A stretch of 64,000 nt of DNA from Hyalangium minutum (lineage in GTDB: Bacteria; Myxococcota; Myxococcia; Myxococcales; Myxococcaceae), in assembly GCF_000737315.1 (NCBI RefSeq), contig NZ_JMCB01000008.1:434001-498000 (forward strand), written 5' to 3'. Positions 18,527 to 55,327 of this stretch are shown here, piece after piece. The position numbers and the translations under genes were made by a program. The notes beneath the pieces are model-generated. The model had not been told where the DNA came from. It saw nothing but the letters and a program-made list of their open reading frames with translations, and searched no databases. Each line of letters begins with the position of its first letter. The stretch's first letter is position 1.

Positions 18527-18547
18527 TGGCACTCCGCGTGCTCTAGG
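18527..18547 (+). promoter_or_regulatory. sigma54-type -24/-12 promoter
   Basis: TGGCACTCCGCGTGCTCTAGG: GG-N10-GC, about 65 bp upstream of the ATG at 18612. Confidence 0.7.
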
Positions 18548-18611
18548 GCCCTGCAACCGCAACGTCAAGCGGCCGGGGACGCAGGGTGCGTCTCCCAGGA
18601 GAACCCCTCTC

Positions 18612-19358
18612 ATGTTCACTCTGTTCAAGAGCAAGGAAGCCACCCGCGCCGTTCCCGAGGCCCCCTTCGTCCACCGCGCCATCCCGGACGACATCACCCT
18701 GGAGCAGCTGGGCTCCGAGCTGCGCCAACTGTTCGCCCAGGAGAACTCCAACCACCACCGCATGGGGGAGATCTACAACCACATCGTCGAGAAGAAGCTG
18801 GCGGAGGCGGCCGGCTACAAGGACTCGACGGAGTACTTCCGCAAGGAGTTGGCGGACCTGTCCGTGGCGTCGCTGAAGATGTACGGGGCGGTGGCGGAGA
18901 GCTTCAGCGAGCCGGTGGCGCGGCGCTTCGGCGTCACGTGCCTGTCGGTGCTGCTCACCTACGCGGAGGCCACCGGGCTGGAGCTCAACCACGAGGAGCC
19001 GGGCCCCACCCCCATCGAGGTGCCGGACGAGCACGGGAACGTGGCGGTGCAGCCGTTCGGCGCGTGCAGCGTGGACCAGATGCGCCGGGCCCTGCAGCGC
19101 AAGCGCCGGCCCACCTCCACCAAGCCCCTGCCGCCGGAGAAGGTGGCGCTGGCCGAGCAGTACTCCGCGGCGGTGGCACAGCGCTTCCCCAAGGGCAAGG
19201 GCACCCAGTTGAAGGTCAAGCTGCGCAACCAGAAGGGCAAGGCAGTGCTCGACATCCAGGGCATCCCCCTGGAGCAGATCCTCCAGCTCGTTGAAGCGCT
19301 CTCCGCCGAGCTGCCTCCGGTGAGCACCGGAGAGAAGGCGCCGGTGCAGCCGTCCTGA
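18612..19358 (+). CDS. Myxobacterial hypothetical protein, possible helical DNA-binding N-terminal domain
   Basis: AGGAG RBS; strong GC3 codon bias; MGEIYN..GY....YF..EL..LS...LKMY.AVA..F resembles DUF3102/ParB-HTH-like patterns (inference). Confidence 0.8.
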   Translation: MFTLFKSKEATRAVPEAPFVHRAIPDDITLEQLGSELRQLFAQENSNHHRMGEIYNHIVEKKLAEAAGYKDSTEYFRKELADLSVASLKMYGAVAESFSEPVARRFGVTCLSVLLTYAEATGLELNHEEPGPTPIEVPDEHGNVAVQPFGACSVDQMRRALQRKRRPTSTKPLPPEKVALAEQYSAAVAQRFPKGKGTQLKVKLRNQKGKAVLDIQGIPLEQILQLVEALSAELPPVSTGEKAPVQPS

Positions 19359-19595
19359 TGTTCCGTCCGTGAGTCATGGCCCCGCGTTCCAGAAGCTCGG
19401 GACGCGGGGCCTCCTTCTCCCCGGGCTACCTGAGGCTGCCCTCATGTCCGACGCGTTCCTGCCCGCGCTGTTTCCCGGCTACGCCCGCAGCGTGCAGTGC
19501 CAGCACATCTTCCTCGACATAAAAGTGTCGTCCGGAGAGAGGAAATGCTGGAGCCAGCAGCCTGAGCGTCCCTACTCTTGGGATAAAACGCCTAC

Positions 19596-20351
19596 ATGGC
19601 TCAGCATCTCATCAGTGCAGGGACGGATATCGCCTGTGTGGGCATCTGGGATGCGGGACTTGCCCCATCGGCACGTCCGATTGGGGACAAGGATCTGGCT
19701 GCGAGCGCGGAGCGCGGCGAGGTTCTTCCAATACAAACACACGCGGACGGAACATACCTGTTGAGAATCCACGTGGATGAGCCGTACGTGCCACCTCCTG
19801 CACAGCGATTCGAGACGATGGGTCGAGAGTTCGGGCTGAACCTCGGCTCGGGCACTGCGCTCGTCGGCGGGTGTGAGGATTTCCGAAACCCACGCCCGCA
19901 GATCACTTTTGCTGCGGACCGATTCCATGTGGAGCCTTCCTGGTATCGGGTGCAGGTTCATCTGAACCGGACAGACCCAGAACTGCTCGAGCGGCTCGCT
20001 CACAGGGAAGCAGAGACGGCCTTGAGCGAAGAGGAGAACGTGCGCTATCGCCAACTCGGAAAGGACCAACACCGGGCGCTCTTCTTGGGGCTGGGAGCTC
20101 TGGGAACTGCCATCTTGTCCGGTGTGATTCGAGGCACTGCCGGTGTCATGGGCGGAGGCGTTGCCGTGCTGCTGGCAGGGGCGGCTTTCGCGTTTGCTCG
20201 CCGCGCCAAGAAGGCCGGCTACGACTCGCTGCATGCTCGCTATCAGACCGCGCTCGCCGCCGCGCATGAGCCAGATGTTGTGCTCGTACTACACCGCACG
20301 GGTGAACCCATTCCAGGCGGATCCGTCGACTTGGAGGCCACGGCTTCGTGA
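19596..20351 (+). CDS. Hypothetical membrane protein
   Basis: 251-aa ORF with two adjacent hydrophobic Gly-rich helices near the C-terminus. Confidence 0.75.
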   Translation: MAQHLISAGTDIACVGIWDAGLAPSARPIGDKDLAASAERGEVLPIQTHADGTYLLRIHVDEPYVPPPAQRFETMGREFGLNLGSGTALVGGCEDFRNPRPQITFAADRFHVEPSWYRVQVHLNRTDPELLERLAHREAETALSEEENVRYRQLGKDQHRALFLGLGALGTAILSGVIRGTAGVMGGGVAVLLAGAAFAFARRAKKAGYDSLHARYQTALAAAHEPDVVLVLHRTGEPIPGGSVDLEATAS

Positions 20352-20540
20352 CGCGAGGCCCTCTGGTACACAGTTCATCGAGGTCCTGACCCGCTCCTCT
20401 ATGGAAGCGGCGGTAATCGAAACTGCGGCTTCCAGTTCTGGGAACTCCTCTCGCCGTGAATCTGCGAGCTTCTCACCACGGCTTGGGCCCGCCCCTTCGG
20501 GCCTCAGAAAAATGGGTCGGCGTGGCGTGTGTCGCGCGGG

Positions 20541-21242
20541 CTAGGGCAAGCGGACGCCGCGCTCGGCCTCGAAATGGCGCCGCCAGCGCGCCCGCAGGTT
20601 GCTTTGAGGCACTCCGTGAGGCTCGTCGAGGAACTCGGCGGCGAGGATGCGGTCGGTTCGAAAGTGCCGGAAGGTCGATCGAAGCTCGCACCAGGCGGCG
20701 AGCAGCCGCACCGTCTCGGCATAGCCGATGACGACGGGCCAGATCGTCCGCTCGCTCTCCCGGCCATGGTCGTCCCGATAGCGGATGTGGATCTTCCGCC
20801 CGCTGCGGATCCACGCGCGGGTGCGGGCCATGTCCAGCCCATCCACGGCGGCGCTCATGGGCGGCGGGGCGCCGATGGTCGGCTCGGCGATGAACGGGCG
20901 CAGCCGTTCCGGCACGACCGCGGCGATCTTGGCCACGAGGTCTCGCGCCGCGCTCGCGAGCTCGGCGTCGCTTCGCTCGGCGACCCACTGCGCGCCGAGC
21001 ACCGCGGCCTCGAGCTCAGCGGGCGTGAGCATCAACGGCGGCATGTCGAAGTCGCGCTCAAGTACGTAGCCCAACCCCGCCTCGCCGCGGATCGGCACCC
21101 GCTGTCCGATGAGGTCCGCGACGTCGCGATAGACGGAGCGCTTCGACACCTCCAGCTCCGCGGCCAGAGCGCCAGCCGTCACCGGGCTGCCGGAGCGCCG
21201 GAGAATCTGGATGATCTGGAACAGACGATCGGCGCGGCGCAT
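20541..21242 (-). CDS. YafY-family HTH-WYL transcriptional regulator
   Basis: MRRADRLFQIIQIL, LA.ELEVS.RSVYRD, GEAGLGY, AWCELR..FRHFRTDRI. Confidence 0.95.
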   Translation of the reverse strand: MRRADRLFQIIQILRRSGSPVTAGALAAELEVSKRSVYRDVADLIGQRVPIRGEAGLGYVLERDFDMPPLMLTPAELEAAVLGAQWVAERSDAELASAARDLVAKIAAVVPERLRPFIAEPTIGAPPPMSAAVDGLDMARTRAWIRSGRKIHIRYRDDHGRESERTIWPVVIGYAETVRLLAAWCELRSTFRHFRTDRILAAEFLDEPHGVPQSNLRARWRRHFEAERGVRLP

Positions 21243-21336
21243 GGGGCGGTTTCCTGCTGACAGCATGCTGGCAACAGCCCTTCGCTACAAGCGGGCCACG
21301 GTCACAGCAGTGGCCGCCCCCCGAAGGAGGACACGC

Positions 21337-21738
21337 ATGAACTTCGTCTCAATCCGCCTGATCACCGCCGACATCGACCGCCTGGTCCGCTTCTACGAGC
21401 GAATCACTGGCCTGCCGACGACCCGGTATACCGAGGATTTCGCGGAGCTGATCACCTCGGCCTGCACCCTCGCGATCGGCAGCACGCGCACGCTCCATCT
21501 GTTCGGCGGCAACGTCGCCCGGCCTGCCGACAACCACACCGCCATCATCGAGTTCCGCGTCGACGACGTCGACGAATCGTTCCGAATACTGGCGGACGTC
21601 ATCGGCGGTTCCCTGGTGCAAAAGCCCACCACCATGCCGTGGGGCAACAGATCGCTGCTGTTCCGCGATCCCGATGGCACCCTGGTGAACTTCTTCACGC
21701 CGGTTACGAAGGAAGCGATCGCGAAATTCGCTCGATAG
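21337..21738 (+). CDS. VOC/glyoxalase-family protein
   Basis: AAGGAGG RBS; EFRVDDVD, PTTMPWGNRSLLFRDPDGTLVNFF; divergent from the WYL regulator. Confidence 0.92.
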   Translation: MNFVSIRLITADIDRLVRFYERITGLPTTRYTEDFAELITSACTLAIGSTRTLHLFGGNVARPADNHTAIIEFRVDDVDESFRILADVIGGSLVQKPTTMPWGNRSLLFRDPDGTLVNFFTPVTKEAIAKFAR

Positions 21739-21845
21739 GCGCGGTCTGTCCACCACCCGGGAGCATCACTCGGGCGGCCCCATGAGCGGCCCTCCTCGGC
21801 CCCTCTGCACCCTGGTTCCCCCTCAGAGAGAAAGGACATCCTGAG

Positions 21846-21878
21846 TGGAGGCGGCGGGAATCGAACCCGCCGCCTCCA
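21846..21878 (-). mobile_element. tmRNA 3'-end copy embedded in a perfect 13-bp hairpin, att-like
   Basis: TGGAGGCGGCGGG-AATCGAA-CCCGCCGCCTCCA; 21846-21870 is the exact reverse complement of 17748-17772. Confidence 0.8.
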
Positions 21879-22003
21879 GCGCGGGTCTGCTGTAGCCTGC
21901 TCTCATAGGCCCCGATCCCACAAGCAGGCAGGGGCTCCACGGGGGCCCCGTGGGAGGCGAACGGTAGCGTGTGCCCTGGCGAGGTGTGGCTGGGGAGGGG
22001 TAG

Positions 22004-23188
22004 GTGGGAACGCACGTGTGGGCGTACCGGCGAAGGCAGCCGGAGGGGACGGTGCTGTACGAGGCGGTGCGGGAGAACCTGGCCAGATTGCTGGCGGAAG
22101 CCAGCGAGGTAGGGCGAGGCCTGCCCCGGTACGTGGAGCGAGACTTCGCCAGGTACCTGGAATGCGGAGTGCTGGCGCACGGCTTCGCGCGGGTGCGCTG
22201 CGAGAGTTGCAAGGACGAGCTGCTTCGTCGCCTTCTCGTGCAAGGGCCGAGGGGTGTGCCCGTCCTGCAACGCGAAGCGGGCGCATGTGACGGCGGTGCA
22301 CCTGGTGGAGCAGGTGCTGCCGCACGTGCCCTACCGGCAGTGGACGCTGTCCTTTCCGCACCGGGTCCGGTGGGTGCTGCTCAAGAACGTGGGACTGCTT
22401 TCGGACGTCCTCACCGTCTTCCTGCGCGCGGTGTTCGCCCTGCAGCGCCGGAGGGCACGGCGACAGGGTCTGCGCGCTGGGCAGGTCGGAGCCGTCTCTT
22501 TCATCCAGTTCTTCGGCTCCGCCTTGCAGGTAACGCCGCACTTCCACTCGCTGGTGCCGGATGGCGTCTTCGTGCCGCGGGAGGGCAGCGTGCGCTTCGA
22601 GCCGTTGCCGCCGCCCACGCAAGGTGAGGTGGAGAGGCTGCTGAGGGTGGTGCGCCTGCTGGAGAAAAGAGGGGCCCTGCCCGCGCAAGGACCCGAGGAT
22701 GCGCTGCAGGCGTACCAGGCGCACTCCCTGCAGCAACGGCTGCGCTGGACGGAGGTGGACCGCCGGCTCCCTCCCAGCAAGCAGCCCCGGTGCGCCTTGC
22801 TGGAAGGCTTCTCCCTGCATGCCAATACTCACCTCCATGCCAACGACAGGCAGGGGCTGGAGCGGCTGTGCCGCTATGGAGCGCGTGGCGCGCTGGCGCT
22901 GGAGCGCCTGTCGCGAATGGAGGATGGCCGCATCGCCTACCGCATGAAGCGCCCGCTGCCGGACGGCACCACGCACCTGCTCTTCACCGGGCTGGGACTG
23001 TTACGGCGTGTAGCGTCCCTGGTACCTCCGCCACGGGCAAACCTCACGAGGTTCCACGGCGTCTTGGCTCCAGGCGCGCAACTGCGGCCATTTCTGGTCC
23101 CCCGAGCGGGAGGGGAGGAGAGGAGCGAGGCGCCCCAGGCAGCGGCCAGCACGGAGCCGATGAAGGAGAAGACGCCGCGAGGAGACTT
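22004..23188 (+). pseudogene. IS91-family rolling-circle (HUH/Y2) transposase, frameshifted and 3'-truncated
   Basis: Zn-binding domain [27 protein letters not shown] with an extra base near 22225; HUH motif PHFH; LCRYGARG; breaks off after MKEKTPRGD. Confidence 0.9.
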
Positions 23189-23423
23189 CGCGGATCGGCA
23201 GGGCCCTTTTCCCGAGGGAATTGCGTATCCCATGCCCGAGAAGCCATTCAAGGAGCAGAGCAAGCCGCCGTGCGTCGAGGGCCGGGAAGAGGAAGTCCGG
23301 GGCGGATGCTGGATTCCCCACGCGAAGACCGCGCCCTGTTCCCGAGGCACGGCCGAGTTGCAGGGCAAGTGCTACGTGCCCGTGAAGAAGCCGGACCCGG
23401 CACCGACTTCCGTTCAGCCCTGA
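23189..23423 (+). pseudogene. Captured C-terminal Cys domain of a myxobacterial kinase-type gene, fused in frame to the transposase
   Basis: [30 protein letters not shown] parallels the C-terminus of the 2475..3293 protein. Confidence 0.7.
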
Positions 23424-23650
23424 AGCTGTAACGAAGCGGCTTGAATGAAGAGGCGGTCGTCTTCCTGACCGAGCCCCTCGCCGCACACTGGCGCGGCTTG
23501 CAGGGGCCTTTGCTCCTTCCTGGCTTCTCACAAGGTGCGAAACGCGAACCGAGGTGGGTCCACTGACATGTCATTGGGTCAGGCCCACCCTTCATTTGTT
23601 CTTACAAATCGAGACAACGTCTTGGACCGGTACTGGCCCTGAGACACCTC

Positions 23651-23671
23651 TGGCGTGCTCTGGGCTCTAGG
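23651..23671 (+). promoter_or_regulatory. Possible sigma54-type promoter of the 692-aa gene
   Basis: TGGCGTGCTCTGGGCTCTAGG: GG-N10-GC with the same GCTCTAGG tail as 18527 and 55307; the -12 bases are weak. Confidence 0.45.
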
Positions 23672-23768
23672 CTTCGTAGTGAGAGGGATGCGTGTAACCC
23701 AAAAAAATCGGGCCGCGTAACCCATTCATCGTCGCCACCACTCCACCAAGACATCCGAGAATAAATCA

Positions 23769-25847
23769 ATGACATCCATCAAATCGAAGCAGCCCTCCGC
23801 AATGCCTGTTCCCCCTCGTGCCTCCGCCGTGGAACAGAAGCCCATCACTCCCACCAGGACCACACCCAAGGCACAGACCGCCGCCGCCGCCCTGAAGGAT
23901 GTTTTCGAGTCGCGTGCTCGCACGTCACCGGCCGCCCTTCGTGCCTTCGCCGTGGAACAGAAGCCCATCACTCCCACCAGGACCACACCCAAGGCACAGA
24001 CCGCAGCCGCCGCCCTGAAGGATGTTTTCGAGTCGCGTGCTCGCACGTCACCGGCCGCTCCCGCGAGCGCGTCGCCCGAGTTCTACGGTGCGGACCCGAG
24101 CACGATGGACGTCCCCGATCTCGGCGTGACCGCACGGGGACGGGACACCAGTACCGAGAGGATGATGCGGCTCCATGCCGCCGGCGTAGACGAGTTGATC
24201 ATCAATCCCCGAAACGATTTCGAGAACGCCTCCAAGGCCGCCGAGAAAGCGGACAAGGAACTGGCCAAGCTCGTCGCGGGCTTTGGTCCCGCCCTGTCCA
24301 AGGAGGAACAAGACAAGGCCATCAAGGCGTTCAAGGAAACCCCACACAACGCCGAGATCTACAAGAGAGCCGAAGAGACCGCGGACAAGCTCATCACCGC
24401 GATCAACGAGTCCCCAAAGAACCGGGACGCGGTGCCCGAAGCCTACAGAGACGATTTTGACTCGGAGGTGGCGACCGCCAAGGAACTCCTGCCTCGGCTC
24501 GCCAACACGGAGAAGGGTCAGGACGCCATCGCCGACGCCGTGGAAGCCCTGGGGACGAACGAGGAGAGTGCCGAGAAGAGCGAGAAGTTGGCCTTGCTGG
24601 CCACCGCACGCCAAGCCGTTCAAGGAGCGGATACCGCCATCGTCAAGTCCGTCAGCCAGCGTCTGCTGTCGTTGTCCAAGGACAATGCGGGCGAGGCCCA
24701 GAAGCTCTTCGACGGTTTGAAGAAGGCGGGTCCTTATCTGGGCCTCTCCGATGCGGACGCCACGAAGCTTGGCGACAACCTCAAGGACATCCACCAGAAC
24801 AAGCCCGGGGCATTGGATGCGTACAAGGAGACCATCACCCAGGCGAAGATCGATGTGCCGGGAGGCAATACCGAAGTCACACGGGACCTCTTCAAGGGCT
24901 TGGGTCTGGCCGCCACCATCGCCAGCTTCAGCTCGGGCCTGCGAGATGGAGATGTGGATGCGGTCATCAAGACCACGTCCGAGGGACTGCAGATCGGCGC
25001 GGACGGCGCCTCACTGGTCACGGGGGTGTTGTCCGCCTCCTCCTCCAATCCCGCGAAGTATGCGTCAGTCGCCAAGGCCTTCGACAAGGTGGGAGGGGTC
25101 GCCGGAATCGTGGGCGGAGTGGCGGACTTCATCACCGCCGGCAATAGCTTCGCGGAGGGGGACTATGGCAAGGGCATCACTTCGCTGATCGCCGGGGCGG
25201 GCGGAGTCCTCTCGGGCGCGTCCGCCATCGTGTCCATTCCCGTGGTGGGACAGATCGCCGCGGGACTGCTAACGGTGGGCGGGTTCATCGGAGGCGCCAT
25301 CGTCGAGGCGATCAAGGAGGCCAAGGAAGAGAAGCTCGCCGAGGACAACTCCACGTCCTTTCTGGAGGGAGGCGGCGTCCGCCCCGAGGCGGCCCGGGAA
25401 CTGGCGGACCTCAGCGGCCCGGAGCACAAGAACGTGGGTCCCGCGATCGTCCAACTGGCGGAGCGCCTCAAGTTCGAACCGAGGGACTTTCTGCGCTTCA
25501 TCGCCGAACAGCCTCCCGAGAAGATCGCGGGCTTTGTGGATAATGCCCTCGCCATCCCCCAGGATCCCCACAACCCGGATCGACTCGTTGAAAGCTCTTC
25601 GACCGACTACCGCTACATCGATCGCCAGGACAATCCGGTTTCCTTCGAGAAGGGACGGAAGAACCTCAGGGGTGGGAAGGACGTGAAGACTGGCAGCATC
25701 AGGCAACTGGAAGGCTACCTGAAGGACCAGAACCTCCTGCCCCCGCCCCCCCCGCCTCCCCCGCCCTCCGTGCCCAAGACGGCTCCGATCAACTTCGAGG
25801 ACCTCATGGAGGTGCTCAAGGAGAAGGAGGAAGTCAAAAGCATCTGA
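23769..25847 (+). CDS. Large hypothetical protein, effector/translocator-like
   Basis: Disordered Pro/Ala/Thr N-terminus, helical middle, long Gly/Ala-rich hydrophobic stretch in the C-terminal third, poly-Pro tail; no Sec signal. Confidence 0.8.
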   Translation: MTSIKSKQPSAMPVPPRASAVEQKPITPTRTTPKAQTAAAALKDVFESRARTSPAALRAFAVEQKPITPTRTTPKAQTAAAALKDVFESRARTSPAAPASASPEFYGADPSTMDVPDLGVTARGRDTSTERMMRLHAAGVDELIINPRNDFENASKAAEKADKELAKLVAGFGPALSKEEQDKAIKAFKETPHNAEIYKRAEETADKLITAINESPKNRDAVPEAYRDDFDSEVATAKELLPRLANTEKGQDAIADAVEALGTNEESAEKSEKLALLATARQAVQGADTAIVKSVSQRLLSLSKDNAGEAQKLFDGLKKAGPYLGLSDADATKLGDNLKDIHQNKPGALDAYKETITQAKIDVPGGNTEVTRDLFKGLGLAATIASFSSGLRDGDVDAVIKTTSEGLQIGADGASLVTGVLSASSSNPAKYASVAKAFDKVGGVAGIVGGVADFITAGNSFAEGDYGKGITSLIAGAGGVLSGASAIVSIPVVGQIAAGLLTVGGFIGGAIVEAIKEAKEEKLAEDNSTSFLEGGGVRPEAARELADLSGPEHKNVGPAIVQLAERLKFEPRDFLRFIAEQPPEKIAGFVDNALAIPQDPHNPDRLVESSSTDYRYIDRQDNPVSFEKGRKNLRGGKDVKTGSIRQLEGYLKDQNLLPPPPPPPPPSVPKTAPINFEDLMEVLKEKEEVKSI
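23816..24058 (+). repeat. In-frame tandem duplication, 123-bp unit, two copies
   Basis: TCGTGCCTCCGCCGTGGAACAG.. at 23816 recurs at 23939; the 41-aa unit RASAVEQKP..SPAAL is duplicated. Confidence 0.95.
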
Positions 25848-25861
25848 GGGACGTCGAGCCT

Positions 25862-26490
25862 CTACCCGTGTCGGCTCAGCAGCAGCGGTGATGCGAGCCG
25901 CTGCTCCGGGTGCATGCGCAGGAGCAGGTGGATGACGCCCGTGAGTCCCGGCATCAGCCCGGGCGAGAACGCCTCCCGCGCCAGTCCGCCCACCGGGCCG
26001 CGCTCCTCCAGGCTCGAAATCAACTCCGCGTCCATCCACGCCCGGTCCGGCCCCCGGTAGCCCTCCGGGTCGATGCGCCGCGCCGTGTCCAACAGCGCCC
26101 ACGTGCCCAGGTCGCCATGGCACAGCGTGTGGCTCCAGCCGAAGCCCTCGCGCGTGCTCGCCGCGGTGGCCCGCCGCAGCACGTCCAAATACCCCTCGCC
26201 CTTCGTGCGCACGTGGAGATCGCCCGCTACCAGTCCAATCCCCGTGCTGCCGTGACACCAGGCCGCGACGGAGTCCACCGAGCTGCCCACGCGCACGTCC
26301 TTCCAGTCGCCCAGTTCCGGCCGGTACAACGACTCCTCGAAGGCGAACGCCGCGTCCGCCAGCTCCCGCCACCGCTGCCGGTCCTCCGCCGTCCCCGCCG
26401 CGCTCAGGCTCAGGCGCGCCAGGCACCAGCCAATCCCCGTCGCGCCGTGGGCCATTCCCCCAATCGCCTCGGGGAACATCGACTCCCCCA
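25862..26490 (-). pseudogene. C-terminal LanC-like cyclase fragment of a lanthipeptide synthetase (LanM-type)
   Basis: GMAHGATGI, AWCHGSTGI, TLCHGDLG, GLMPGLTG motifs; the 5' part is replaced by IS91 sequence. Confidence 0.85.
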
Positions 26491-26956
26491 AGCGGGAGGG
26501 GAGGAGAGAAGCGAGGCGCCCCAGGCAACGGCCAGCACGGAGCCGATGAAGGAGAAGACGCCGCGAGGAGACTGGGCCGAGTTGCTGAAGAGGACGGGTT
26601 CGCCTGCGTGAGGTGTGGAGGCAGACGGCGAGTGCTGGCGTACGTGAACAAGGCAGGAGGAGTGCGAGCGATTCTGGAGCACCGGGGCCTGCCCACGGCA
26701 GGTGTGAGGCGGGCCCCGGCGCGCGAGCCCCCTCAAGCCGCGGGGTGTTGAGGCTCAAGCCGCCAGGGCCAAGAGAGCCAAGCCCCTGCCGCCCACCTCA
26801 TGGGAGGGCGGCCAGGGCCGGCGTGTACTCCAAGGGGCTGCGCGGCTTCTCCACCCGCTTGGCCCACTGCTCGGGCGGCCCCCGTCAGCGGCACTCCTCT
26901 GCACCTCCTCTCCAGCCCTCACCCTCCACATGGCCTCTATCCCGCCTATACGCGTC
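26491..26956 (+). mobile_element. IS91-family 3' end (degraded transposase C-terminus plus terminal region)
   Basis: Repeats 23105-23188 almost exactly, continues DWAELLKRT..ACVRCGGRRRVLAYV..GVRAILEH.GLP, and ends at CCGCCTATACGCG. Confidence 0.85.
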
Positions 26957-28518: not shown

Positions 28519-28581
28519 AGGGTGATACTCCTGTTTATTGAGTGACCGCTACACAAATAAGGAACCCACCACCTCATTTCA

Positions 28582-30099: not shown

Positions 30100-30445
30100 G
30101 TTTCGAACCGCCCCCACCGCCGGGAACCGGCAGGCGGCCAAGTCTCACCAGTGAGACTTTTGGAACGGCGGCGCAGAAGCGGGGAGCGCGACGGGCCCAG
30201 TCCACGATCGTGGACTGTCCCAGTCGTGTCCGGCGAAGACTCACGCCTGTCGCTTCAAGGGGTTGGCTGCTTGGGGCAGCCGTCCTGATGTTCCGTCCGT
30301 GAGTCACGGCCTCGCGTTCCGGAAGCCCGGGACGCGGGGCCTCTTTCCCCCGGGTTACCGGAGGCTGCCCTCATGTCCGACGCTCCCCTGCCCGCGCTGT
30401 TTCCTGGCTACGCCCGCGACGTGCAGTGCCAGCACATCTTCCTCC
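30100..30445 (+). repeat. Internally deleted copy of the 18200-19510 cassette
   Basis: About 30110-30280 matches 18210-18375 and about 30277-30445 matches 19347-19515; promoter and gene are missing. Confidence 0.9.
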
Positions 30446-34368: not shown

Positions 34369-34713
34369 CCACCGTGTGTTGCCCTTGTGGCGCGCCCCAA
34401 CTAGCTGCCTGACGGTGGGGCGCCAATCGCATGGCAGGGCGGGTGGGGGTCCAAGAACGAACGCCCTACCCGTCCGGGTGGCTGGCGCGGAAACTGCTAG
34501 AGGCTCGTGACGTGCGGCGGCTCCGCCACACCCGAAGTGCTTTGCGGGCCCGGGGAGAGAAGGAGGCCGCGTCCTCGGCGTGGCTGACCTCGGATGGCCG
34601 CCAGCTCCTGCTCGAAGTTCGCGGACGACCTCTGGGTGGACATGGGCTGGAATGCCCGGGACGGCTCGGGCGTCACGGTCCACGCCGTGAAGCCCGAGGA
34701 GGAGCCCTGAGCA

Positions 34714-47983: not shown

Positions 47984-48040
47984 CCTCTGTGAGGCACAGA
48001 CGCCGGCCGCACGCGAAAAACAGCGGGCGCGGAGGAACAA

Positions 48041-49537: not shown

Positions 49538-49556
49538 CACTGCTCGTACCAACGAC

Positions 49557-49585
49557 AAAGCCCCTCTCCGAGTGGAGAGGGGCCG
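49557..49585. terminator. Intrinsic terminator-like hairpin
   Basis: GCCCCTCTCC-GAGT-GGAGAGGGGC, 10-bp stem about 20 nt after the monooxygenase stop. Confidence 0.7.
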
Positions 49586-49613
49586 TCGGAAAGCCGGAGT
49601 TGGACTCAGCCGC

Positions 49614-49845
49614 CGAGCATCAGAAAAATGGGAGGCCAGTTGAAGGTCCTGGGCCTGTGGGTTGTCTTGAGCGCCTCAACACCCCGCTGCCTGATGTGGC
49701 CCTCGCGCCGCGGCCAGCCTCGCACCTGCCGTGGTCAGGCCCAGGGGCTTCACAATCGCGCGCCCCCCTCGTGCTGCCTTCACGTACGCCAACACCCTGA
49801 AGCCTGCCTCCACACCTCACGCAGGCGAACACGTCGAAGTCGAGT
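49614..49845 (-). mobile_element. IS91-family 3'-end remnant
   Basis: Minus frame reads LDFDVFACVRCGGR; shares GAGCATCAGAAAAATGGGAGGCC.GTTGAAGGT with 54614-54647. Confidence 0.8.
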
Positions 49846-50123
49846 GAGCTTGAAATCCGGGTGGGGACGAATGCATCCCTCGGAGGCTTGGAAAAACTTG
49901 GAAATCGTCTCTTCCATGAACTGTGAATCTTGCACGGCTCCGTAGCGCACCGTCCGAGGGGAGGTGCGCTGGGCGCAGCCCTGGAGAATTTTCCCTGCCG
50001 GGGCAAGCTCAAGCAGGGGGTTCCCCTTAATCCATTCTTCTATTGTGCAATCAATAACACCTGTAGAGTCCGCCGCCCGAATTGAGCCTCGCTCTCCGAA
50101 GCGCCGTAGGGGCTGGAGTCACC

Positions 50124-53045
50124 ATGACGACGAAGTACCCGCTGTTGCTTGTGCTGGCACTGGCCGCTGCTTGCGGAGACAACCACAAGCCCAATCTTCC
50201 CCCCACTGTCGCGGATGTCAGCGTCTCCACCGCCGAGGACACCCCGGTGGCCATCACCGTCTCGCCGGAGGATGCGAACGGCGACGCGCTTGAGGTCACA
50301 TTCGCCACCCCCAGCCATGGCACGCTCGCGGGCACGGGGACGTCGGTGACGTACACGCCCCATGCGAACTTCGCCGGAAAAGAGACGTTCACGGTCACGG
50401 TCTCCGATGGCAAGGCCTCGGCGACAGCCACCATCTCCGTCACCGTGAACCCGGTCGATGACGCCCCGGTGGCGGGCAACGACACCGCGACGACGGACGA
50501 GAACGTACCGCTGACGCTGGCGGCCGCCACCCTGCTGGCCAATGACACCGAAGTGGACGGGCAGACTCTCACCATCACTGGCGTGAGCAGCGCGGTCTCC
50601 GGTACCGTGGTCTTGGCAGGCACCACCGTCACCTTCACTCCCACAGCCGATTTCTCGGGCACGGCCCGTTTCCAGTACACCGTGTCGGACGGCACCCTCA
50701 CCGCCACCGCCACCGTCACCGTGACGGTGAACATGGTGAATGACGCTCCGGTGGCGACCGATGACACCGCGACGACAGACGAGGACGTGCCGCTGACACT
50801 GGCCACCAGCACCCTGCTGGCCAACGACACGGACCCGGAAGGACAGACACTGACGATCACCGGCGTGAGCGGCGCGGTCTCTGGCACAGTGGCGCTGGCG
50901 GGCACCACCGTCACCTTCACCCCCACGGCCGACTTCTCGGGCACGGCCCGTTTCCAGTACACCGTGTCGGACGGCTCCCTCACCGCCACTGCCACCGTCA
51001 CCGTCACCGTGAGCCCGGTCGATGATGCCCCGGTGGCGACCGATGACACCGCGACGACGGACGAAGACGTGCCGCTGGCGCTGGCCACCAGCACCCTGCT
51101 GGCCAACGACACGGACCCGGAAGGGCAGACACTGACGATCACCGGCGTGAGCGGCGCGGTCTCTGGCACCGTGGCTCTGGCAGGCACCACCGTCACCTTC
51201 ACCCCCACGGCCGACTTCTCGGGCACGGCCCGTTTCCAGTACACCGTGTCGGACGGCTCCCTCACCGCCACCGCCACCGTCACCGTGACGGTGAACCCGG
51301 TGAATGACCCCCCGGTGACGACCGACGACACCGCGACGACGGACGAAGACGTGACGCTGACGCTGGCGGCCACCACCCTGCTGGCCAACGACACCGACGT
51401 GGACGGGCAGACGCTGACGATCAGCGCCGTGCAGAACCCGAGCAATGGCGTGGCCACGCTCTCCGGGACGACCCTCACCTTCACTCCCAACGCAAACTTC
51501 AATGGCACGGCCGCCTTCGAGTACGTAGCGACCGACGGGCTGGCCACCCGCATCGGTCTGGTCACGGTGACGGTGAACCCGATCAACGACGCGCCCGTGG
51601 CCACCGACGCCACGGTGAGGGTGGCCCAGAACACCTCCACCACCGTCACCCTGAGGGCCACGGACGTGGACGGTGACGCACTGTCCTTCACCATCGCCAC
51701 CCCTCCCGCTCAAGGAACGCTGGCAGGGACAGGCGCCAACCAGACCTACGCTCCGGCAGCGGACTTCGCGGGGCAGGACAGCTTCACCTTCACGGTCAGT
51801 GATGGCACGCTGACCTCCAACACCGCCACGGTCAGCATCACCGTCTACCCTCCCTTCGTTTGCGGCGACGGCAACCTTGAGCCCGGCGAGGTGTGTGACG
51901 ACGGAAACCGCGTCGCTGGGGACGGCTGTCGCGCGGACTGCCGCGGCCTGGAGGTGTGCGGCGACGGCCTGGTGGACAGCGTCGCGGGCGAGCAGTGCGA
52001 TGATGGCGGAACGGCTTCTGGAGACGGCTGCGACGCCTCGTGCCAGCTCGATGCCTTCTCCAGCGTCCCGCCAACGCTCATCAGCGGGGCCTTGAGCTGC
52101 CGCACGAACAACTCGAACACGGGGCGTAAGGTGGCGGTGGATGCGCTGGGCCGCTTCTTCGTGGTGATGAACTGTGGCGGCACCGGGTATGTCAGCGTGA
52201 GCCGGGATCGCGGCCAGACCTGGGTGGGCCCCACCTCCCTGGGCATCACCGGCGTCGCGGAGATCGCGATTGAAGGCGGCCCCACGGGAACCGCCTATGT
52301 GTCGGCCCTCGCCAGTCCGGGCAAGCTGATTTTCACCCGGACCACCGACGCGGGCGAGACCTGGGAGACCCCTCGAGAGATCTCAGCTGTGGTCGAGGCC
52401 GAGGTGAGCATGGACTCCCTGGGCGACGCCCTCTACATGTCCTTCTCGATGAACTCGACGAACCTGCGCATCCTCCGGAACTCCGCCCGGGGCGAAGGTT
52501 CTTTCATCGTCACGGATGTGGCCCAGGCCAATAGCTTCCACGAGCTCATCGTGGACAAGATCAGTGGAGACGTGTTCTCGGTGAGTGACAACCCGGCGTT
52601 CCACATCCGCCGCAGCAGCGACGCGGGCGCCACCTTCGGCGCCGAGAGCGCACCGCCCGGGCAGGCCTTCTTCTCGGATTGGACAGGCTCCAACAGCTTC
52701 CTCTACACGACAGGAACCAACGGAGACGACAACATTGACGTCATCCCCGTGTCGGCCCCCGGGACGAGCACCCAGGTGCATGGCCTGCCCACGGACGTTG
52801 GCCCTGGCCCCCTCCGCAGCATTGACGCGGATGCGCTCGGTAACGCCTATGTCGTCACGCAACGGAACACGGGCAACATCCAATTGGACAGAATGCTCTT
52901 CGGGGCCTCTTCGGTGGCGCAGGCGGACGCCCGGACCCTTGGCGCCGGCAGCGCCCCGGCGGTCGCGGCTCTCCCCTCGAACACCGGCGCCCTCGTGGCC
53001 TACACGAACGGCACCAGCGTCTACGGCGCGGTGGTCGTGTACTAA
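50124..53045 (+). CDS. Surface adhesin-like lipoprotein: cadherin-like Ig repeats, Myxococcus Cys-rich repeats, C-terminal propeller-like domain
   Basis: Lipobox LAAAC; about six N/DDAPVA.DD..TT.ED Ig units; CGDG...GE.CDDG.....DGC...C twice; VSRDRGQTW / RTTDAGETW / [12 protein letters not shown] (Asp-box) motifs. Confidence 0.9.
50463..51590 (+). repeat. Intragenic tandem repeats, 282-bp (94-aa) period, four units
   Basis: Equivalent A/P-P-V codons at 50463, 50745, 51027, 51309 and 51591; units 2 and 3 are nearly identical. Confidence 0.9.
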
Positions 53046-53085
53046 ATTCACGCTTTGCCTTCATCCCCTTTTCGAGACCGTGTTC

Positions 53086-54525
53086 ATGCGGAAGTTCGTT
53101 GCGAAGTCATGGGTGTACACTGTGAGCCTGCTGGCGATCTCTGGCCTGCTGGCAGCCCCTCAGGCGCGAGCGGAGGGTGAGGAGCCCCAGGGCCACCTGG
53201 AGGCGGGGCTCTTCGGAGGCGGGCACTTCTTCTCCAAGAATGGAGAGCTGGGGGTGGCGGACTACCCAGACCTGGTGCCCTCGCTCAAGAACTCCGGGTT
53301 GCTGGGAGCCCGGCTGGGCTATGCGCTGCTCCCGAGCCTGTGGGTGGAAGGCGAGCTGGCCGCCATCCCCACCTCGGACTCCCTCTCGGACGCGTCCGTC
53401 TTCGTGATGGGCTGGCGGGCCCATGCCCTGTTCCACTTCTGGAGCTCGGGCCGCTGGCGTCCTTTCCTGGCTGCGGGCGTGGGGGCCCACAGCTCCTTCA
53501 CGGGGCGCACGGGGGTGGATCAGGTGGAGAATGACACGGACTTCGCCCTCCACTGGGGTGCCGGACTCAAGTACGACCTGACGCCCCGGCTGTCGCTGCG
53601 CGGAGATCTGCGCCACCTGCTGCCGCCCTCCCGGCAGAGCCGTGGCGTCACCCATGACTTCGAGCTGCAGGCGGGCCTCTCCTACCGCTTCGGTGGCGAA
53701 TCCCGCCCGGCCCCCCCTCCGCCTGAGCCCCTGGACACGGATGAGGATGGGGTGCGGGATGAGGCGGACGCCTGTCCGCGTGAGGCGGAGGACAAGGACG
53801 GCTTCCAGGACGAGGACGGCTGCCCGGACAACGACAATGATCAGGACGGGGTGGCCGACGCCGCCGACAAGTGTGTGGACCAGGCTGAGACCGTCAACCA
53901 AGTGGATGACGAGGACGGGTGCCCCGAGACAGACGAGGATGGGGACGGTCTCCTGGGCTCCAAGGATGCGTGTCCCGCGCAGGCGGAGGACAAGGACGGC
54001 TTCCAGGACGAGGACGGCTGCCCGGACAACGACAATGATCAGGACGGGGTGGCCGACGCCGCCGACAAGTGCCCCGCCGAGTTGGAGACGCGCAATGGTT
54101 TCCAGGACGACGATGGGTGCGCCGATGAGCTGCCGAAGGCGGTGCAACGCTTCACGGGCGTCATCACCGGGCTCCAGTTCGCGGCGGGCTCGGACCGCAT
54201 CCAGGCCACGTCCTATGCGCTTCTGGATCAGGCGGTCAAGGTGCTGAAGCAGTACCCGGACGTGCGGTTGGAGATCTCGGGGCACACCTCATCGGACGGG
54301 AACGCGCAGGCCAACCAGGAGCTGCCACAGCGACGAGCCGAGGCGGTGCGGAAGTACCTGCTGTCCAAGGGGATTGAGGCGAGCCGGGTGACGGCGCAGG
54401 GGTTTGGCTCCTCCCGCCCCCTGATGCCGAATGAGGCGAGGTCGGGGCGTGAGAAGAACCGGCGCATCGAGTTCCGGGTCATCAACGACGCGCCAGCGAG
54501 CGGAGCGGAGGCGCACCCCAAGTAA
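53086..54525 (+). CDS. OmpA-family protein: OM beta-barrel, TSP3 repeats, OmpA C-terminal domain (TraB-like architecture)
   Basis: Signal peptide; barrel strands; D.DEDG..D..D.CP...ED.DGFQDEDGCPD repeats; ISGHTSSDG..N..L..RRAEAV..YL..NRRIEF. Confidence 0.93.
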   Translation: MRKFVAKSWVYTVSLLAISGLLAAPQARAEGEEPQGHLEAGLFGGGHFFSKNGELGVADYPDLVPSLKNSGLLGARLGYALLPSLWVEGELAAIPTSDSLSDASVFVMGWRAHALFHFWSSGRWRPFLAAGVGAHSSFTGRTGVDQVENDTDFALHWGAGLKYDLTPRLSLRGDLRHLLPPSRQSRGVTHDFELQAGLSYRFGGESRPAPPPPEPLDTDEDGVRDEADACPREAEDKDGFQDEDGCPDNDNDQDGVADAADKCVDQAETVNQVDDEDGCPETDEDGDGLLGSKDACPAQAEDKDGFQDEDGCPDNDNDQDGVADAADKCPAELETRNGFQDDDGCADELPKAVQRFTGVITGLQFAAGSDRIQATSYALLDQAVKVLKQYPDVRLEISGHTSSDGNAQANQELPQRRAEAVRKYLLSKGIEASRVTAQGFGSSRPLMPNEARSGREKNRRIEFRVINDAPASGAEAHPK

Positions 54526-54611
54526 GGGCCCGAGACCCGCGCGCTGAAAACCGTTTCCGGTCCTCGCGGGCGCCCACGATTCTGCGGCCCCGAGCAGCCC
54601 GGCCCCGATTC

Positions 54612-54730
54612 TGGAGCATCAGAAAAATGGGAGGCCGGTTGAAGGTGAGGGCTGGAGAGGAAGGGCCGAAGAGGGCTGCGGACGGGGTCCGCCCGAGCAG
54701 TAGCAACTCGGCCCAGTCCTCTCGCGGACT
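54612..54730 (-). mobile_element. IS91-family terminal remnant
   Basis: Reverse complement CCTCTCCAGCCCTCACCTTC matches about 26907-26926; also contains REDWAELLL (compare RGDWAELLK). Confidence 0.7.
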
Positions 54731-55039
54731 CCGCTGCTTCATCCGCTCCGTTCGGGCCGCTGCCTCCTTCCCCGAGCTCGACTCCTACTCACCGGCTTAT
54801 CTTTCCATGCGCACATGGCAGGTACACCCTTTCATGGTCGATGTCAGAACCCTCCCGAGCGGATTGAGGCCATCCCTCTACCGTCGTCAGCATCTGGCGC
54901 ATTAGGAGGAAGCACTGATCAGGCCGTTGGTGACCCGCTGGGAGTGAGCAGCGATGGCACTCTTGCGACCGAGGATTTGTTGCGTGTGACCGCCAACCCT
55001 TGAGGTTTGGGAGAGCCGAGGCGTGAGGCTCCAACCCGG

Positions 55040-55130
55040 CTCCTGCCTTCACACCTCACGCAGGCGAACACGTCCAAGTCCAACGTCCTCCTCAGCAACT
55101 CGGCACTGTCCTCTCGCGGCGTCGCGAGCG
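55040..55130 (-). mobile_element. IS91-family transposase remnant
   Basis: Minus frame reads TPREDSAELLRRTLDLDVFACVRCEGR. Confidence 0.75.
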
Positions 55131-55306
55131 GGGGCTCCGTTCGGGCGCGGTGGCGAACGGATCTGGCGCACATGGGCTGCCTGGACGGCCAGGTGGTGAC
55201 TCCAGTCAGCAGGAAAAACAGCAGTCACCAGTCTTCCACCCCTCTTTCGGGGCCGTTCTCGAGGAAAAACGGCCCTTCTCGGGCCTTTAGGGGGCCGAAA
55301 AGCCGT

Positions 55307-55327
55307 TGGCATGTTCCCTGCTCTAGG
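55307..55327 (+). promoter_or_regulatory. sigma54-type -24/-12 promoter
   Basis: TGGCATGTTCCCTGCTCTAGG: GG-N10-GC, about 40 bp upstream of the ATG at 55365. Confidence 0.65.

What the first reader, a model, noticed from the sequence alone, without database searches (positions are those of the whole stretch)
18527..55327. One extended sigma54 motif, TGGC-N9-GCTCTAGG, precedes three unrelated genes without signal peptides
Seen: identical spacing at 18527, 23651 and 55307, each on the + strand 40-100 bp upstream of a gene (orphan 18612, translocator-like 23769, transglycosylase 55365). The shared TCTAGG tail goes beyond the standard GG-N10-GC consensus and contains the rare CTAG. Inference: a dispersed co-regulated set, possibly contact-dependent predation or competition effectors.
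Basis: partly seen in the sequence, partly recalled or inferred. Interest (0 to 1): 0.7.

Follow-up and report, generated by a model that had tools for sequence, protein, structure and literature searches.

The report
Three sigma-54 promoters in a myxobacterium
The repeated motif marks three real-looking sigma-54-type promoters in a myxobacterial genome; two are conserved in related genera, but they probably answer to different activator proteins, so this is an ordinary kind of promoter with a slightly unusual extension.

Summary
TGGC-N9-GCTCTAGG occurs exactly three times, all on the + strand, 37-98 nt upstream of start codons, against 0.01 expected.

It is a sigma-54 (-24 GG / -12 GC) promoter.
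- For the transglycosylase gene (55365), the same promoter lies at the same place in 26 loci of Archangiaceae and Myxococcaceae.
- For the gene at 18612, it lies there in about 27 loci.
- Each family has its own upstream inverted repeats, which look like activator sites.
- FHA-domain sigma-54 activator genes lie next to both families in other genomes.

- The "orphan" belongs to a multi-copy family with 309 homologs.
- CTAG itself is not conserved. In the tail only T16 and the final GG are. One genome (H. versicolor) carries four different tails.
- The upstream sites differ, so a single shared activator is unlikely.
- Site 23651 is the weakest. It has GGGC instead of TGC at -12, its profile score is within the chance range, and its orthologs are uninformative.

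The effector idea is a lead only. The transglycosylase is 51% identical to an Erwinia hrp-cluster enzyme that sits behind an hrp box. The 692-aa protein weakly resembles a membrane-active T6SS effector family. No secretion genes lie in the window.

A fourth candidate site is at 34483.

The parts
18527..18547 (+). Sigma-54-type promoter of the 248-aa family gene: -24 TGGCAC, -12 GTGCT, tail CTAGG.
   Evidence: Exact motif. The same promoter lies about 84 nt before the ATG in about 27 family members. Profile score 18.4 bits.
18447..18473 (+). Candidate activator (EBP) binding site: GTAGAC-GAATC-GTCCAC-GATC-GTGGAC, about 55-80 bp upstream of the -24 element.
   Evidence: Inverted repeat. The GGAC / GTCC / GGAC half-sites are invariant across 11 aligned family members. 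Function is inferred.
18298..18313 (+). Second copy of the palindrome GTCCACGATCGTGGAC. It lies inside a 175-bp dispersed repeat that recurs at 30120-30290.
18557..18594 (+). Conserved 5' leader with two hairpins: CCGC..GCGG and GGGACGC..GCGTCTC, just before the ribosome-binding site.
   Evidence: RNAalifold consensus of 14 family leaders. Four of 11 pairs show compensatory changes. Role unknown.
18612..19358 (+). Gene for a 248-aa protein with no signal peptide. It belongs to a multi-copy family in Hyalangium, Stigmatella and relatives; function unknown.
   Evidence: 309 homologs. No hit in Pfam, PHROGs, NCBIfam or PADLOC. AlphaFold2 model pLDDT 76, with no Foldseek PDB match better than E = 0.5.
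23651..23671 (+). Weaker sigma-54-type promoter candidate: -24 TGGCGT, -12 GGGCT (G instead of the usual T before GC), tail CTAGG.
   Evidence: Exact motif. Profile score 14.0 bits, within the null range. No upstream repeat of the kinds seen at the other two sites. An IS91-family transposase gene ends 228 bp upstream.
23769..25847 (+). Gene for a 692-aa all-helical protein with a Gly/Ala-rich hydrophobic segment (about aa 440-520), no signal peptide and an internal 123-bp tandem duplication.
   Evidence: The start is supported by alignment with homologs. No Pfam family. Weak NCBIfam hit to the T6SS effector BTH_I2691 family, 33 bits against a cut-off of 150. 208 remote relatives of 750-1000 aa share its core. 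Duplication.
55307..55327 (+). Sigma-54-type promoter of the transglycosylase gene: -24 TGGCAT, -12 CTGCT, tail CTAGG.
   Evidence: Exact motif. Best profile score in the window, 26.1 bits. TGGC and TGCT are invariant in 26 orthologous or paralogous loci.
55195..55231 (+). Candidate activator site: GGTGAC-TCCA-GTCAGC followed by GTCACCAG, 76-112 bp upstream of the -24 element.
   Evidence: Inverted repeat. Invariant in the four closest genera. Present as GGTGAC-N4-GTCACC or CTGATGAC...GTCATCAG in Corallococcus, Myxococcus and Stigmatella. Function is inferred.
55251..55274 (+). Conserved inverted repeat with an A-tract (GGCCGTT-CTCGAGGAAA-AACGGCC) between the activator site and the promoter. 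It may be a DNA-bending or protein-binding element.
   Evidence: Nearly invariant in four genera. In Myxococcus the same position holds AATCAATGACTTG, which fits the IHF consensus WATCAANNNNTTR as I recall it. Role is inferred.
55365..56375 (+). Gene for a 336-aa protein: Ser/Gln/Pro-rich N-terminal half without a signal peptide, and a C-terminal SLT lytic transglycosylase domain. It is a paralog of the M. xanthus MXAN_0114 type.
   Evidence: Pfam SLT, 1.4e-21. 86% identical to the H. versicolor protein. 51% identical over 217 aa to an Erwinia hrp-cluster enzyme.
34483..34503 (+).
   Evidence: Profile score 21.4 bits, above all 30 null windows. Intergenic position. The ORF has GC3 of 0.95. No comparative data.

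Best explanation
Each of the three sites is a promoter read by RNA polymerase carrying sigma-54 (RpoN).

Mechanism, taken from established knowledge of sigma-54 rather than shown here: sigma-54 binds the -24 GG (TGGC) and the -12 GC (TGC). The closed complex cannot open by itself. It waits for an ATP-driven enhancer-binding protein (EBP) bound to inverted repeats about 60-120 bp upstream, with DNA bending in between.

The window comes from an Archangiaceae myxobacterium, a group with dozens of EBPs.

The shared tail is not a separate CTAG element. It is a near-consensus version of a clade-typical extension of the -12 region, TGC-T-N3-GG, in which only the T and the final GG (about -7/-6 from the expected start) are under selection. 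Three exact copies in one genome are largely three promoters sitting close to that consensus.

The three promoters have different upstream repeats:
- GTCCRCG-type at 18612.
- GGTGAC-N4-GTCACC-type at 55365.
- None recognisable at 23769.

They therefore most likely respond to different activators, though related ones. The likely activators are FHA-domain EBPs that read Ser/Thr-kinase signals.

Shown here: motif, geometry, conservation, upstream repeats and gene neighbourhoods. Inferred: sigma-54 dependence, the identity of the activators and the role of the GG.
For: - Three exact sites against 0.01 expected.
- The GG-N10-GC spacing is too short for a sigma-70-type promoter, and no sigma-70-like promoter is nearby.
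- Transglycosylase family: TGGC and TGCT are 26/26 conserved at -57 to -89 from the ATG in Hyalangium, Vitiosangium, Archangium, Corallococcus, Myxococcus and Pyxidicoccus. GG at positions 20/21 is 26/26 and 25/26, while positions 17-19 vary.
- 248-aa family: TGGC and TGC are 22/22, and GG is 17/22 and 19/22.
- In 87 fetched loci the exact motif occurs 9 times, always at one of these two promoter positions.
- The upstream inverted repeats are conserved within each family. They have the form of experimentally defined M. xanthus EBP sites: CACCG-N6-CGGTG for PexR (PMC12754779) and GCGCA-N5-TGCGC for NmpR (PMC11841059).
- M. xanthus sigma-54 promoters typically end in (C/G/T)TGCT (PMC9765219).
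- FHA-domain EBP genes lie beside transglycosylase copies in M. xanthus (MXAN_0116 with kinase MXAN_0117), in H. versicolor L004 and in MAG L006.
- FHA-domain EBP genes also lie beside 248-aa family genes in L046, L067 and L068.
- In S. aurantiaca the two gene families lie 5 kb apart, next to the kinase.
- An in-silico survey already reports enrichment of sigma-54 promoters before lytic transglycosylase genes in Myxococcia (PMC12316311).
Against: - There are no transcription data: no start sites and no rpoN or EBP dependence.
- Site 23651 has G instead of T before the -12 GC, scores within the chance range and has no recognisable activator site.
- The two more distant homologs of the site 23651 gene (L034, L035) show only sigma-54-like sequences with spacing one base too long.
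- The window holds no EBP gene.
- I could not test whether the GG extension is general to myxobacterial sigma-54 promoters or specific to these families. The promoter lists in the papers I read stop at the -12 element.
- Many of the aligned loci are closely related, so the conservation counts overstate the number of independent events.
Confidence: 0.7

Rival explanations
1. One regulon: a single activator and signal switch on all three genes together as a set of Sec-independent exported proteins for contact-dependent killing.
For: - The tails are identical.
- Both well-sampled families are linked to FHA-domain EBPs and Ser/Thr kinases.
- They are neighbours in S. aurantiaca.
- A 47%-identical homolog of the 692-aa protein (L034) has two GTCACCAG elements upstream, the motif of the transglycosylase activator site.
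- The transglycosylase is homologous to an Erwinia enzyme in the hrp T3SS cluster behind an hrp box.
- The 692-aa protein weakly resembles a membrane-active T6SS effector family.
Against: - The upstream repeats differ among the three window promoters. GTCACCAG lies only upstream of 55307 among the three promoters.
- The EBPs next to 248-aa family genes in L046 and L068 are double-FHA proteins only 38-42% identical to MXAN_0116.
- The 248-aa protein matches no family and shows no export or effector feature; it often sits alone in variable islands.
- No secretion genes lie in the 64 kb.
- There are no immunity-like partners next to the transglycosylase or the 692-aa gene.
Confidence: 0.15
2. The tail is the binding site of a separate protein, for example a repressor or anti-activator. 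It would overlap the -12 and melting region and gate these promoters, which would explain the conserved GG.
For: - The GG at positions 20-21 is conserved while its neighbours drift.
- As far as I know, standard sigma-54 contacts do not extend there.
- In the 248-aa family the region is partly palindromic (for example GCCCTAGGGC in L045).
Against: - The palindrome is not kept in the transglycosylase family.
- Only two or three bases are conserved, too few for a typical operator.
- No candidate protein is known.
Confidence: 0.1
3. Site 23651 is a chance match or a decayed promoter, and only two of the three sites function.
For: - Profile score of 14.0 bits; 9 of 30 simulated windows reach 14.2 or more.
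- -12 is GGGC rather than TGC.
- No activator-type repeats.
- An IS91-family transposase gene immediately upstream may have cut off the native control region.
- The homolog loci lack a canonical site.
Against: - Given an intergenic GCTCTAGG, a TGGC at exactly N9 has a probability of about 0.006 (my arithmetic from base composition).
- The strand and the 97-nt distance to an ATG supported by homolog alignment are right.
- M. xanthus promoters with non-T at that position have been validated, for example TCGCT and GTGTT (PMC9765219).
Confidence: 0.3
4. Two overlapping sigma-54 promoters: the conserved GG would be the -24 of a second GG-N10-GC promoter 18-19 nt downstream.
For: In Myxococcus and Corallococcus the GG at 20-21 is followed by GC at 32-33 (TGGTGCGTGGGTCGC). 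In the 248-aa family, GG at 21-22 pairs with GC at 33-34.
Against: - In Archangiaceae transglycosylase promoters, including the window, positions 32-33 are TC, yet the GG is still conserved.
- In the 248-aa family the downstream GC is part of a conserved leader hairpin.
- GG-N10-GC is frequent by chance at 66% G+C.
Confidence: 0.05

Closest known systems
Sigma-54 promoters of Myxococcus xanthus with NtrC-like activators (Nla28 targets, PexR-katB/ahpC, NmpR-pilR/mxan_4236)
   Same: - -24 TGGC and -12 (C/G/T)TGCT with the fixed spacing.
- Interrupted palindromes upstream as activator sites.
- Located 40-100 nt before the gene (PMC9765219, PMC12754779, PMC11841059).
   Different: - The upstream repeats here (GGTGAC-N4-GTCACC and GTCCRCG-type) match none of those published sites.
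- The linked activators are FHA-domain EBPs rather than receiver- or GAF-domain ones.
- A conserved GG five bases after the -12 GC has not been described, to my knowledge.
In-silico sigma-54 regulon of Myxococcia (PLoS One 2025, PMC12316311)
   Same: It reports enrichment of predicted sigma-54 promoters upstream of lytic murein transglycosylase genes (COG0741) in Myxococcia, which covers the 55307 site in kind.
   Different: In the passages I read, that study gives no activator sites, no tail extension, and no mention of the 248-aa or 692-aa families.
HrpL (hrp box) regulon of Erwinia and Pseudomonas syringae, which includes T3SS-associated lytic transglycosylases
   Same: - A homologous SLT-domain protein without a Sec signal, 51% identical over 217 aa.
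- Its gene carries a dedicated dispersed promoter motif, GGAACC-N15-CCACTAA.
- It lies next to the sigma-54 activator gene hrpS in the hrp cluster.
   Different: - There the motif is read by an ECF sigma factor, and sigma-54 acts one step upstream. Here the transglycosylase gene itself has the sigma-54 promoter.
- No T3SS genes are near it in the window or in M. xanthus.
Sigma-54/EBP control of T6SS genes (VasH type) and Ser/Thr-kinase/FHA control of T6SS firing
   Same: - In M. xanthus the transglycosylase gene MXAN_0114 is flanked by a fused VipA-VipB sheath-like gene (MXAN_0113), an FHA-EBP and a Ser/Thr kinase.
- The 692-aa protein has a weak hit to the T6SS effector family BTH_I2691.
   Different: - No T6SS core cluster, VgrG, PAAR or immunity genes are adjacent.
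- The NCBIfam score is far below the cut-off.
- The resemblance is by neighbourhood only.

Membership tests
Sigma-54 (RpoN)-dependent promoter | GG and GC dinucleotides separated by exactly 10 bases (the -24 and -12 elements) | tested here: met
   All three sites are TGGC-N9-GC. The spacing is invariant in about 50 related promoters.
Sigma-54 (RpoN)-dependent promoter | Match to the wider consensus TGGCAC-N5-TTGCW | tested here: met
   - 18527: TGGCAC..GTGCT.
- 55307: TGGCAT..CTGCT.
- 23651: only TGGCGT..GGGCT, so met for two sites and marginal for the third.
Sigma-54 (RpoN)-dependent promoter | Upstream activator (EBP) binding sites, usually inverted repeats about 70-150 bp upstream | tested here: inconclusive
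   Conserved inverted repeats are present at 18447-18473 and 55195-31. None is recognisable for 23651. Binding was not tested.
Sigma-54 (RpoN)-dependent promoter | Conservation of the element at the orthologous position | tested here: met
   Met for the transglycosylase family (26 loci) and the 248-aa family (about 27 loci). Inconclusive for the 692-aa gene, which has only 3 homologs and none with canonical spacing.
Sigma-54 (RpoN)-dependent promoter | Transcription start about 12 nt downstream of the GC, and dependence on rpoN and an EBP | not testable with these tools
   Needs 5'-RACE or dRNA-seq and genetics.
T3SS-associated (Hrp-type) lytic transglycosylase | SLT catalytic domain with no Sec signal peptide | tested here: met
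   Pfam SLT 1.4e-21 at aa 196-303. The N-terminus MTSPIASRDFAVRLPVQDV has no hydrophobic core (by inspection). No signal-peptide predictor was available.
T3SS-associated (Hrp-type) lytic transglycosylase | Encoded in, or co-regulated with, a T3SS gene cluster | tested here: not met
   No T3SS genes in the 64-kb window or within 10 kb in M. xanthus. Only the Erwinia homolog is in an hrp cluster.
T6SS effector BTH_I2691 family (NF041559) | Score above the curated family cut-off of 150 bits | tested here: not met
   33.1 bits, E = 2.2e-8, covering aa 153-507 against profile positions 489-816 of 858. Its closer relatives also score below the cut-off or not at all.
T3SS translocator (YopB/IpaB/HrpK type) | Match to a translocator family profile or fold | tested here: not met
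   No Pfam family at E <= 0.01. No PDB sequence match better than E = 0.46. The AlphaFold2 model is too poor (pLDDT 50) for a fold search. Only a generic resemblance remains: a helical protein with a Gly/Ala-rich hydrophobic hairpin.

The most novel reading that the evidence does not exclude
The conserved T-N3-GG extension after the -12 GC marks a sub-class of myxobacterial sigma-54 promoters. These would be served by FHA-domain activators that read Ser/Thr-kinase signals. Together they would control a dispersed set of proteins exported without Sec signals: an HrpH-like wall-cutting enzyme and a membrane-inserting helical protein. The multi-copy 248-aa family, whose role and location are unknown, would be under the same control. 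The exported proteins would serve a contact-dependent apparatus (T3SS-like or sheath-based). The GG would then be a new sequence determinant in the melting region of sigma-54 promoters.
Probability: 0.15. Interest if true: 0.65.

Novelty: new member of a known kind. Interest (0 to 1): 0.35.

Why it matters
Myxobacteria depend heavily on sigma-54 and carry dozens of activators, most with unknown targets.

This analysis gives testable promoter and activator-site pairs for two conserved, uncharacterised gene families. One is the MXAN_0114-type transglycosylase. The other is a multi-copy 248-aa family. Both are tied to FHA-domain activators and Ser/Thr kinases.

If the GG extension proves functional, it would refine sigma-54 promoter models for this clade. 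If the transglycosylase proves to be exported by a secretion apparatus, it would be a first handle on substrates of the poorly understood myxobacterial systems.

As it stands, these are ordinary promoters in an organism known to have many of them.

Tried and rejected
- **Genome-wide concerted tail.** I asked whether the tail co-varies across promoters within a genome. Rejected: H. versicolor has four different tails, and contigs of one metagenome also differ.
- **Second overlapping promoter as the reason for the GG.** Rejected for Archangiaceae.
- **Mobile promoter carried on a repeat.** The spacers and flanks of the three sites are unrelated. BLAST of the upstream regions finds only family orthologs plus an unrelated 175-bp repeat further upstream of site 1.
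- **Function of the 248-aa protein.** Pfam, PHROGs, NCBIfam, PADLOC, PDB sequence search and Foldseek on a pLDDT-76 model all gave nothing significant. A ParB-like impression from the sequence was not confirmed.
- **Function of the 692-aa protein.** The structure model was too poor to search. A profile search found 208 remote relatives, but they carry no Pfam or NCBIfam annotation beyond the same weak hit.
- **Rfam scan of the window.** No family.
- **Other strains of the 692-aa gene.** I looked for copies without the IS91 element upstream. No record was found.
- **Generality of the GG in published M. xanthus sigma-54 promoters.** The papers I read list only the -24 and -12 elements.
- **Literature on MXAN_0113 to MXAN_0117.** There is only a listing of MXAN_0114 among M. 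xanthus lytic transglycosylase genes in the key resources table of a gliding-motility study (PMC11444678).

Full report
**1. The observation**

The pattern TGGC-N9-GCTCTAGG occurs exactly three times in the window, at 18527, 23651 and 55307, all on the + strand. Dinucleotide-preserving shuffles give a mean of 0.01 matches.
- The 8-mer GCTCTAGG occurs only four times in the window on both strands, three of them in the motif.
- CTAG is strongly under-represented: 35 copies against about 200 expected from composition (my arithmetic).
- The motif ends 64, 97 and 37 nt before the ATGs at 18612, 23769 and 55365.
- By inspection, none of the three products has a signal-peptide-like N-terminus.
- The core TGGC-N9-GC alone is very common in this 66% G+C DNA, so the specificity lies in the tail.

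**2. The organism and the window**

The window comes from a myxobacterium of the Archangiaceae. The transglycosylase is 86% identical to that of Hyalangium versicolor and 85% identical to that of Archangium violaceum.

I mapped genes by third-position G+C and annotated them with Pfam. The result is a mixed set:
- Ser/Thr kinases and a DUF2381 protein.
- A WYL regulator and an IS91-family transposase.
- A LanC-like protein and a beta-lactamase-fold enzyme.
- A heparinase-like lipoprotein and a CHAT-TPR protein.
- A cadherin-repeat protein, an OmpA-like protein and a DUF6310/DUF5953 pair.

There is no secretion apparatus and no sigma-54 activator gene in the 64 kb.

**3. The transglycosylase promoter (55307)**

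I fetched 31 loci encoding relatives of the protein.

The promoter itself:
- A sigma-54-type promoter lies at the same place, 57-89 nt before the ATG. It is found in Hyalangium, Vitiosangium, Archangium, Corallococcus, Myxococcus and Pyxidicoccus, and later also in Stigmatella.
- In 26 sequences TGGC and TGCT are invariant.
- Positions 17-19 (CTA in the window) vary: C/A/T, T/C/A and A/G/T.
- The GG at positions 20-21 is kept in 26/26 and 25/26.
- Even the closest relatives have other tails: TTAAGG in H. versicolor, TTCAGG in Vitiosangium and TCAAGT in A. minus.

The region upstream of it:
- About 75-110 bp upstream lies a conserved inverted repeat, GGTGAC-N4-GTCA(C/G)C, followed by GTCACCAG (window 55195-55231). 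It is invariant in the four closest genera and recognisable in all the others.
- Between this repeat and the promoter is a conserved A-tract inverted repeat. In Myxococcus the same position holds AATCAATGACTTG, which fits the IHF consensus as I recall it.
- This is the textbook layout of a sigma-54 promoter.
- The repeat has the form of experimentally defined M. xanthus activator sites (PMC12754779; PMC11841059).

The neighbouring genes in other genomes:
- In M. xanthus the homolog is MXAN_0114. Its neighbours are MXAN_0113 (a fused VipA-VipB sheath-like protein, above the Pfam cut-offs), MXAN_0115 (a C39-like peptidase), MXAN_0116 (an FHA-domain sigma-54 activator) and MXAN_0117 (a Ser/Thr kinase with TPR repeats).
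- The kinase-activator-peptidase block also lies beside a second transglycosylase copy in H. versicolor (L004) and in a MAG (L006).
- The window's gene is the copy without this block, but it keeps the same upstream repeat.
- The FHA-domain activator is therefore the best candidate regulator. This is inferred from linkage.

**4. The gene at 18612 is not an orphan**

The family:
- The gene has 309 homologs at 57-83% identity in Hyalangium, Stigmatella and soil metagenomes.
- There are at least four copies in H. versicolor.
- The copies sit in variable regions with kinases and DUF2381, or with DUF5953, Imm11 and AHH toxin-immunity genes.

The promoter:
- Every copy examined has a sigma-54-type promoter about 84 nt before the ATG: TGGC(A/C/G)CGC-N4-GTGC(T/C)-N3-GG(G).
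- TGGC and TGC are 22/22 conserved, and GG is 17/22 and 19/22. The exceptions are in the most distant members.
- TCTAGG is the commonest single tail, but CATGGG, CCTAGG, TTCAGG, TCTGGG and TTTGGG also occur.

The flanking elements:
- Upstream, three half-sites (GGAC, GTCC, GGAC) are invariant (window 18447-18473).
- Downstream is a conserved leader with two hairpins.

Links to activators and to the transglycosylase:
- In L046 and L068 a double-FHA sigma-54 activator gene is divergent from the family gene. In L067 an FHA-type activator lies just upstream.
- In S. aurantiaca the family gene lies 5 kb from the transglycosylase gene and the kinase.

The protein itself gave no family or fold match.

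**5. The gene at 23769**

- Only three homologs were found by the word-indexed search. Their alignment supports the ATG at 23769.
- One homolog locus (L034) has two GTCACCAG elements upstream, the transglycosylase-type repeat. Neither L034 nor L035 has a sigma-54-like sequence with canonical spacing.
- The window site has G instead of T before the -12 GC and no recognisable upstream repeat. An IS91-family transposase gene ends 228 bp upstream of it.
- The protein is all-helical, with a Gly/Ala-rich hydrophobic stretch.
- It has a weak, sub-threshold NCBIfam hit to the T6SS effector BTH_I2691 family.
- It shares its core with 208 uncharacterised representative proteins of 750-1000 aa.

**6. A profile scan with a null model**

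I built a 25-column profile from 42 distinct promoters outside the window and scanned the window with it. The maxima of 30 Markov-simulated windows ranged from 8.9 to 18.3 bits.

| Site | Score (bits) |
|---|---|
| 55307 | 26.1 |
| 34483 | 21.4 |
| 18527 | 18.4 |
| 23651 | 14.0 |

The third does not on this measure alone.
- A fourth candidate appears at 34483 (TGGCGCGGAAACTGCTAGAGG). It is intergenic and lies 91 nt before a 38-codon ORF with GC3 of 0.95.

**7. What the tail is**

The comparative data show selection on T16 and on the GG at positions 20-21, about -7/-6 from the expected start. They show no selection on CTAG.
- Within one genome the tails differ, so no factor imposes a genome-wide tail.
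- The three identical tails in the window are best read as three promoters close to a clade consensus, T-Y-T-R-G-G. From the observed frequencies of CTA at positions 17-19 in the two families (4/26 and 6/22), two of them agreeing has a probability of roughly 0.04. That is mildly surprising, not decisive.
- Why the GG is kept is unknown. It lies in the region that melts on activation. As far as I know, no sequence-specific sigma-54 contact is described there.
- I could not check whether validated M. xanthus promoters share it.

**8. The effector idea**

- The transglycosylase's closest relatives outside myxobacteria are in Erwinia, Pantoea and Burkholderiales.
- The Erwinia gene sits in the hrp T3SS cluster next to hrpS. 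It is preceded by GGAACC-N15-CCACTAA, which matches the hrp-box consensus as I recall it. That makes a helper role for a secretion machine plausible.
- The fused sheath-like neighbour in M. xanthus points the same way.
- Against it, none of the loci holds an apparatus, and no immunity-like partners are present. Nothing found here marks the 248-aa protein as an effector.
- The literature holds only a listing of MXAN_0114 among M. xanthus lytic transglycosylase genes, in the resources table of a gliding-motility study (PMC11444678).
- An in-silico survey already noted sigma-54 promoters before such genes in Myxococcia (PMC12316311).

**9. Verdict**

- The tight-regulon and effector readings are not established.
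- The finding adds members to a known kind of promoter in a clade known for it. It also gives one modestly interesting detail, the conserved GG, and useful regulator-target hypotheses.

Noticed in passing
window 34483-34710: Fourth sigma-54-type candidate, TGGCGCGGAAACTGCTAGAGG. Profile score 21.4 bits, above all null windows. It lies in the gap between two minus-strand genes, 91 nt upstream of a 38-codon ORF (MAASSCSKFADDLWVDMGWNARDGSGVTVHAVKPEEEP) with GC3 of 0.95. An inverted repeat, GGCGCGCCCCA..TGGGGCGCC, lies 60-100 bp upstream.
   Followed up: partly
window 18218-18390 and 30120-30290: A roughly 175-bp dispersed repeat, 95% identical between the two copies. It carries a small hairpin and the palindrome GTCCACGATCGTGGAC. 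The second copy is not followed by a promoter-like site.
   Followed up: partly
window 55042-55123, 26557-26624, 49803-49841, 8455-8524, 54702-54727: A family of short dispersed intergenic repeats (core ...caactcggcactgtcctctcgcgg...). Two copies lie in the 840-bp gap upstream of the transglycosylase gene.
   Followed up: no
window 22254-23423: IS91-family (Y2) transposase gene directly upstream of the 23651 site. Fragments of the same element are scattered in the window and in related loci, so it may have displaced the native control region of the 692-aa gene.
   Followed up: partly
window 23812-24058: A 123-bp tandem duplication (97% identical) inside the 5' part of the 692-aa gene. It repeats a 41-residue segment that the homologs have only once.
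   Followed up: no
window 18548-18611 and family loci: The leader of the 248-aa family has two conserved hairpins just before the ribosome-binding site, with some compensatory changes. This may be a post-transcriptional control element. There is no Rfam match.
   Followed up: partly
L032 8060-9745 (M. xanthus MXAN_0113): A single 561-aa protein with VipA and VipB (T6SS sheath) domains, both above the Pfam cut-offs. Its gene is divergent from the transglycosylase gene and shares the intergenic activator-site region. It lies away from any T6SS cluster.
   Followed up: partly
L086 (S. aurantiaca) 1-8729: The transglycosylase gene, the Ser/Thr kinase and a 248-aa family gene lie within 9 kb, separated by a 1368-aa NTPase-TPR gene. 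This is the only locus seen where two of the three gene families are neighbours.
   Followed up: partly
window 57715-59180; L082, L083: A DUF6310 + DUF5953 gene pair in the window. In H. versicolor, DUF5953 genes lie next to Imm11 and AHH nuclease toxin genes and near 248-aa family genes. This suggests toxin-immunity islands.
   Followed up: no
window 61863-62494: A 36-bp unit repeated 17.6 times (95% identical) inside a Gly-rich repeat gene. It produced many spurious TGGC-N9-GC core matches.
   Followed up: no
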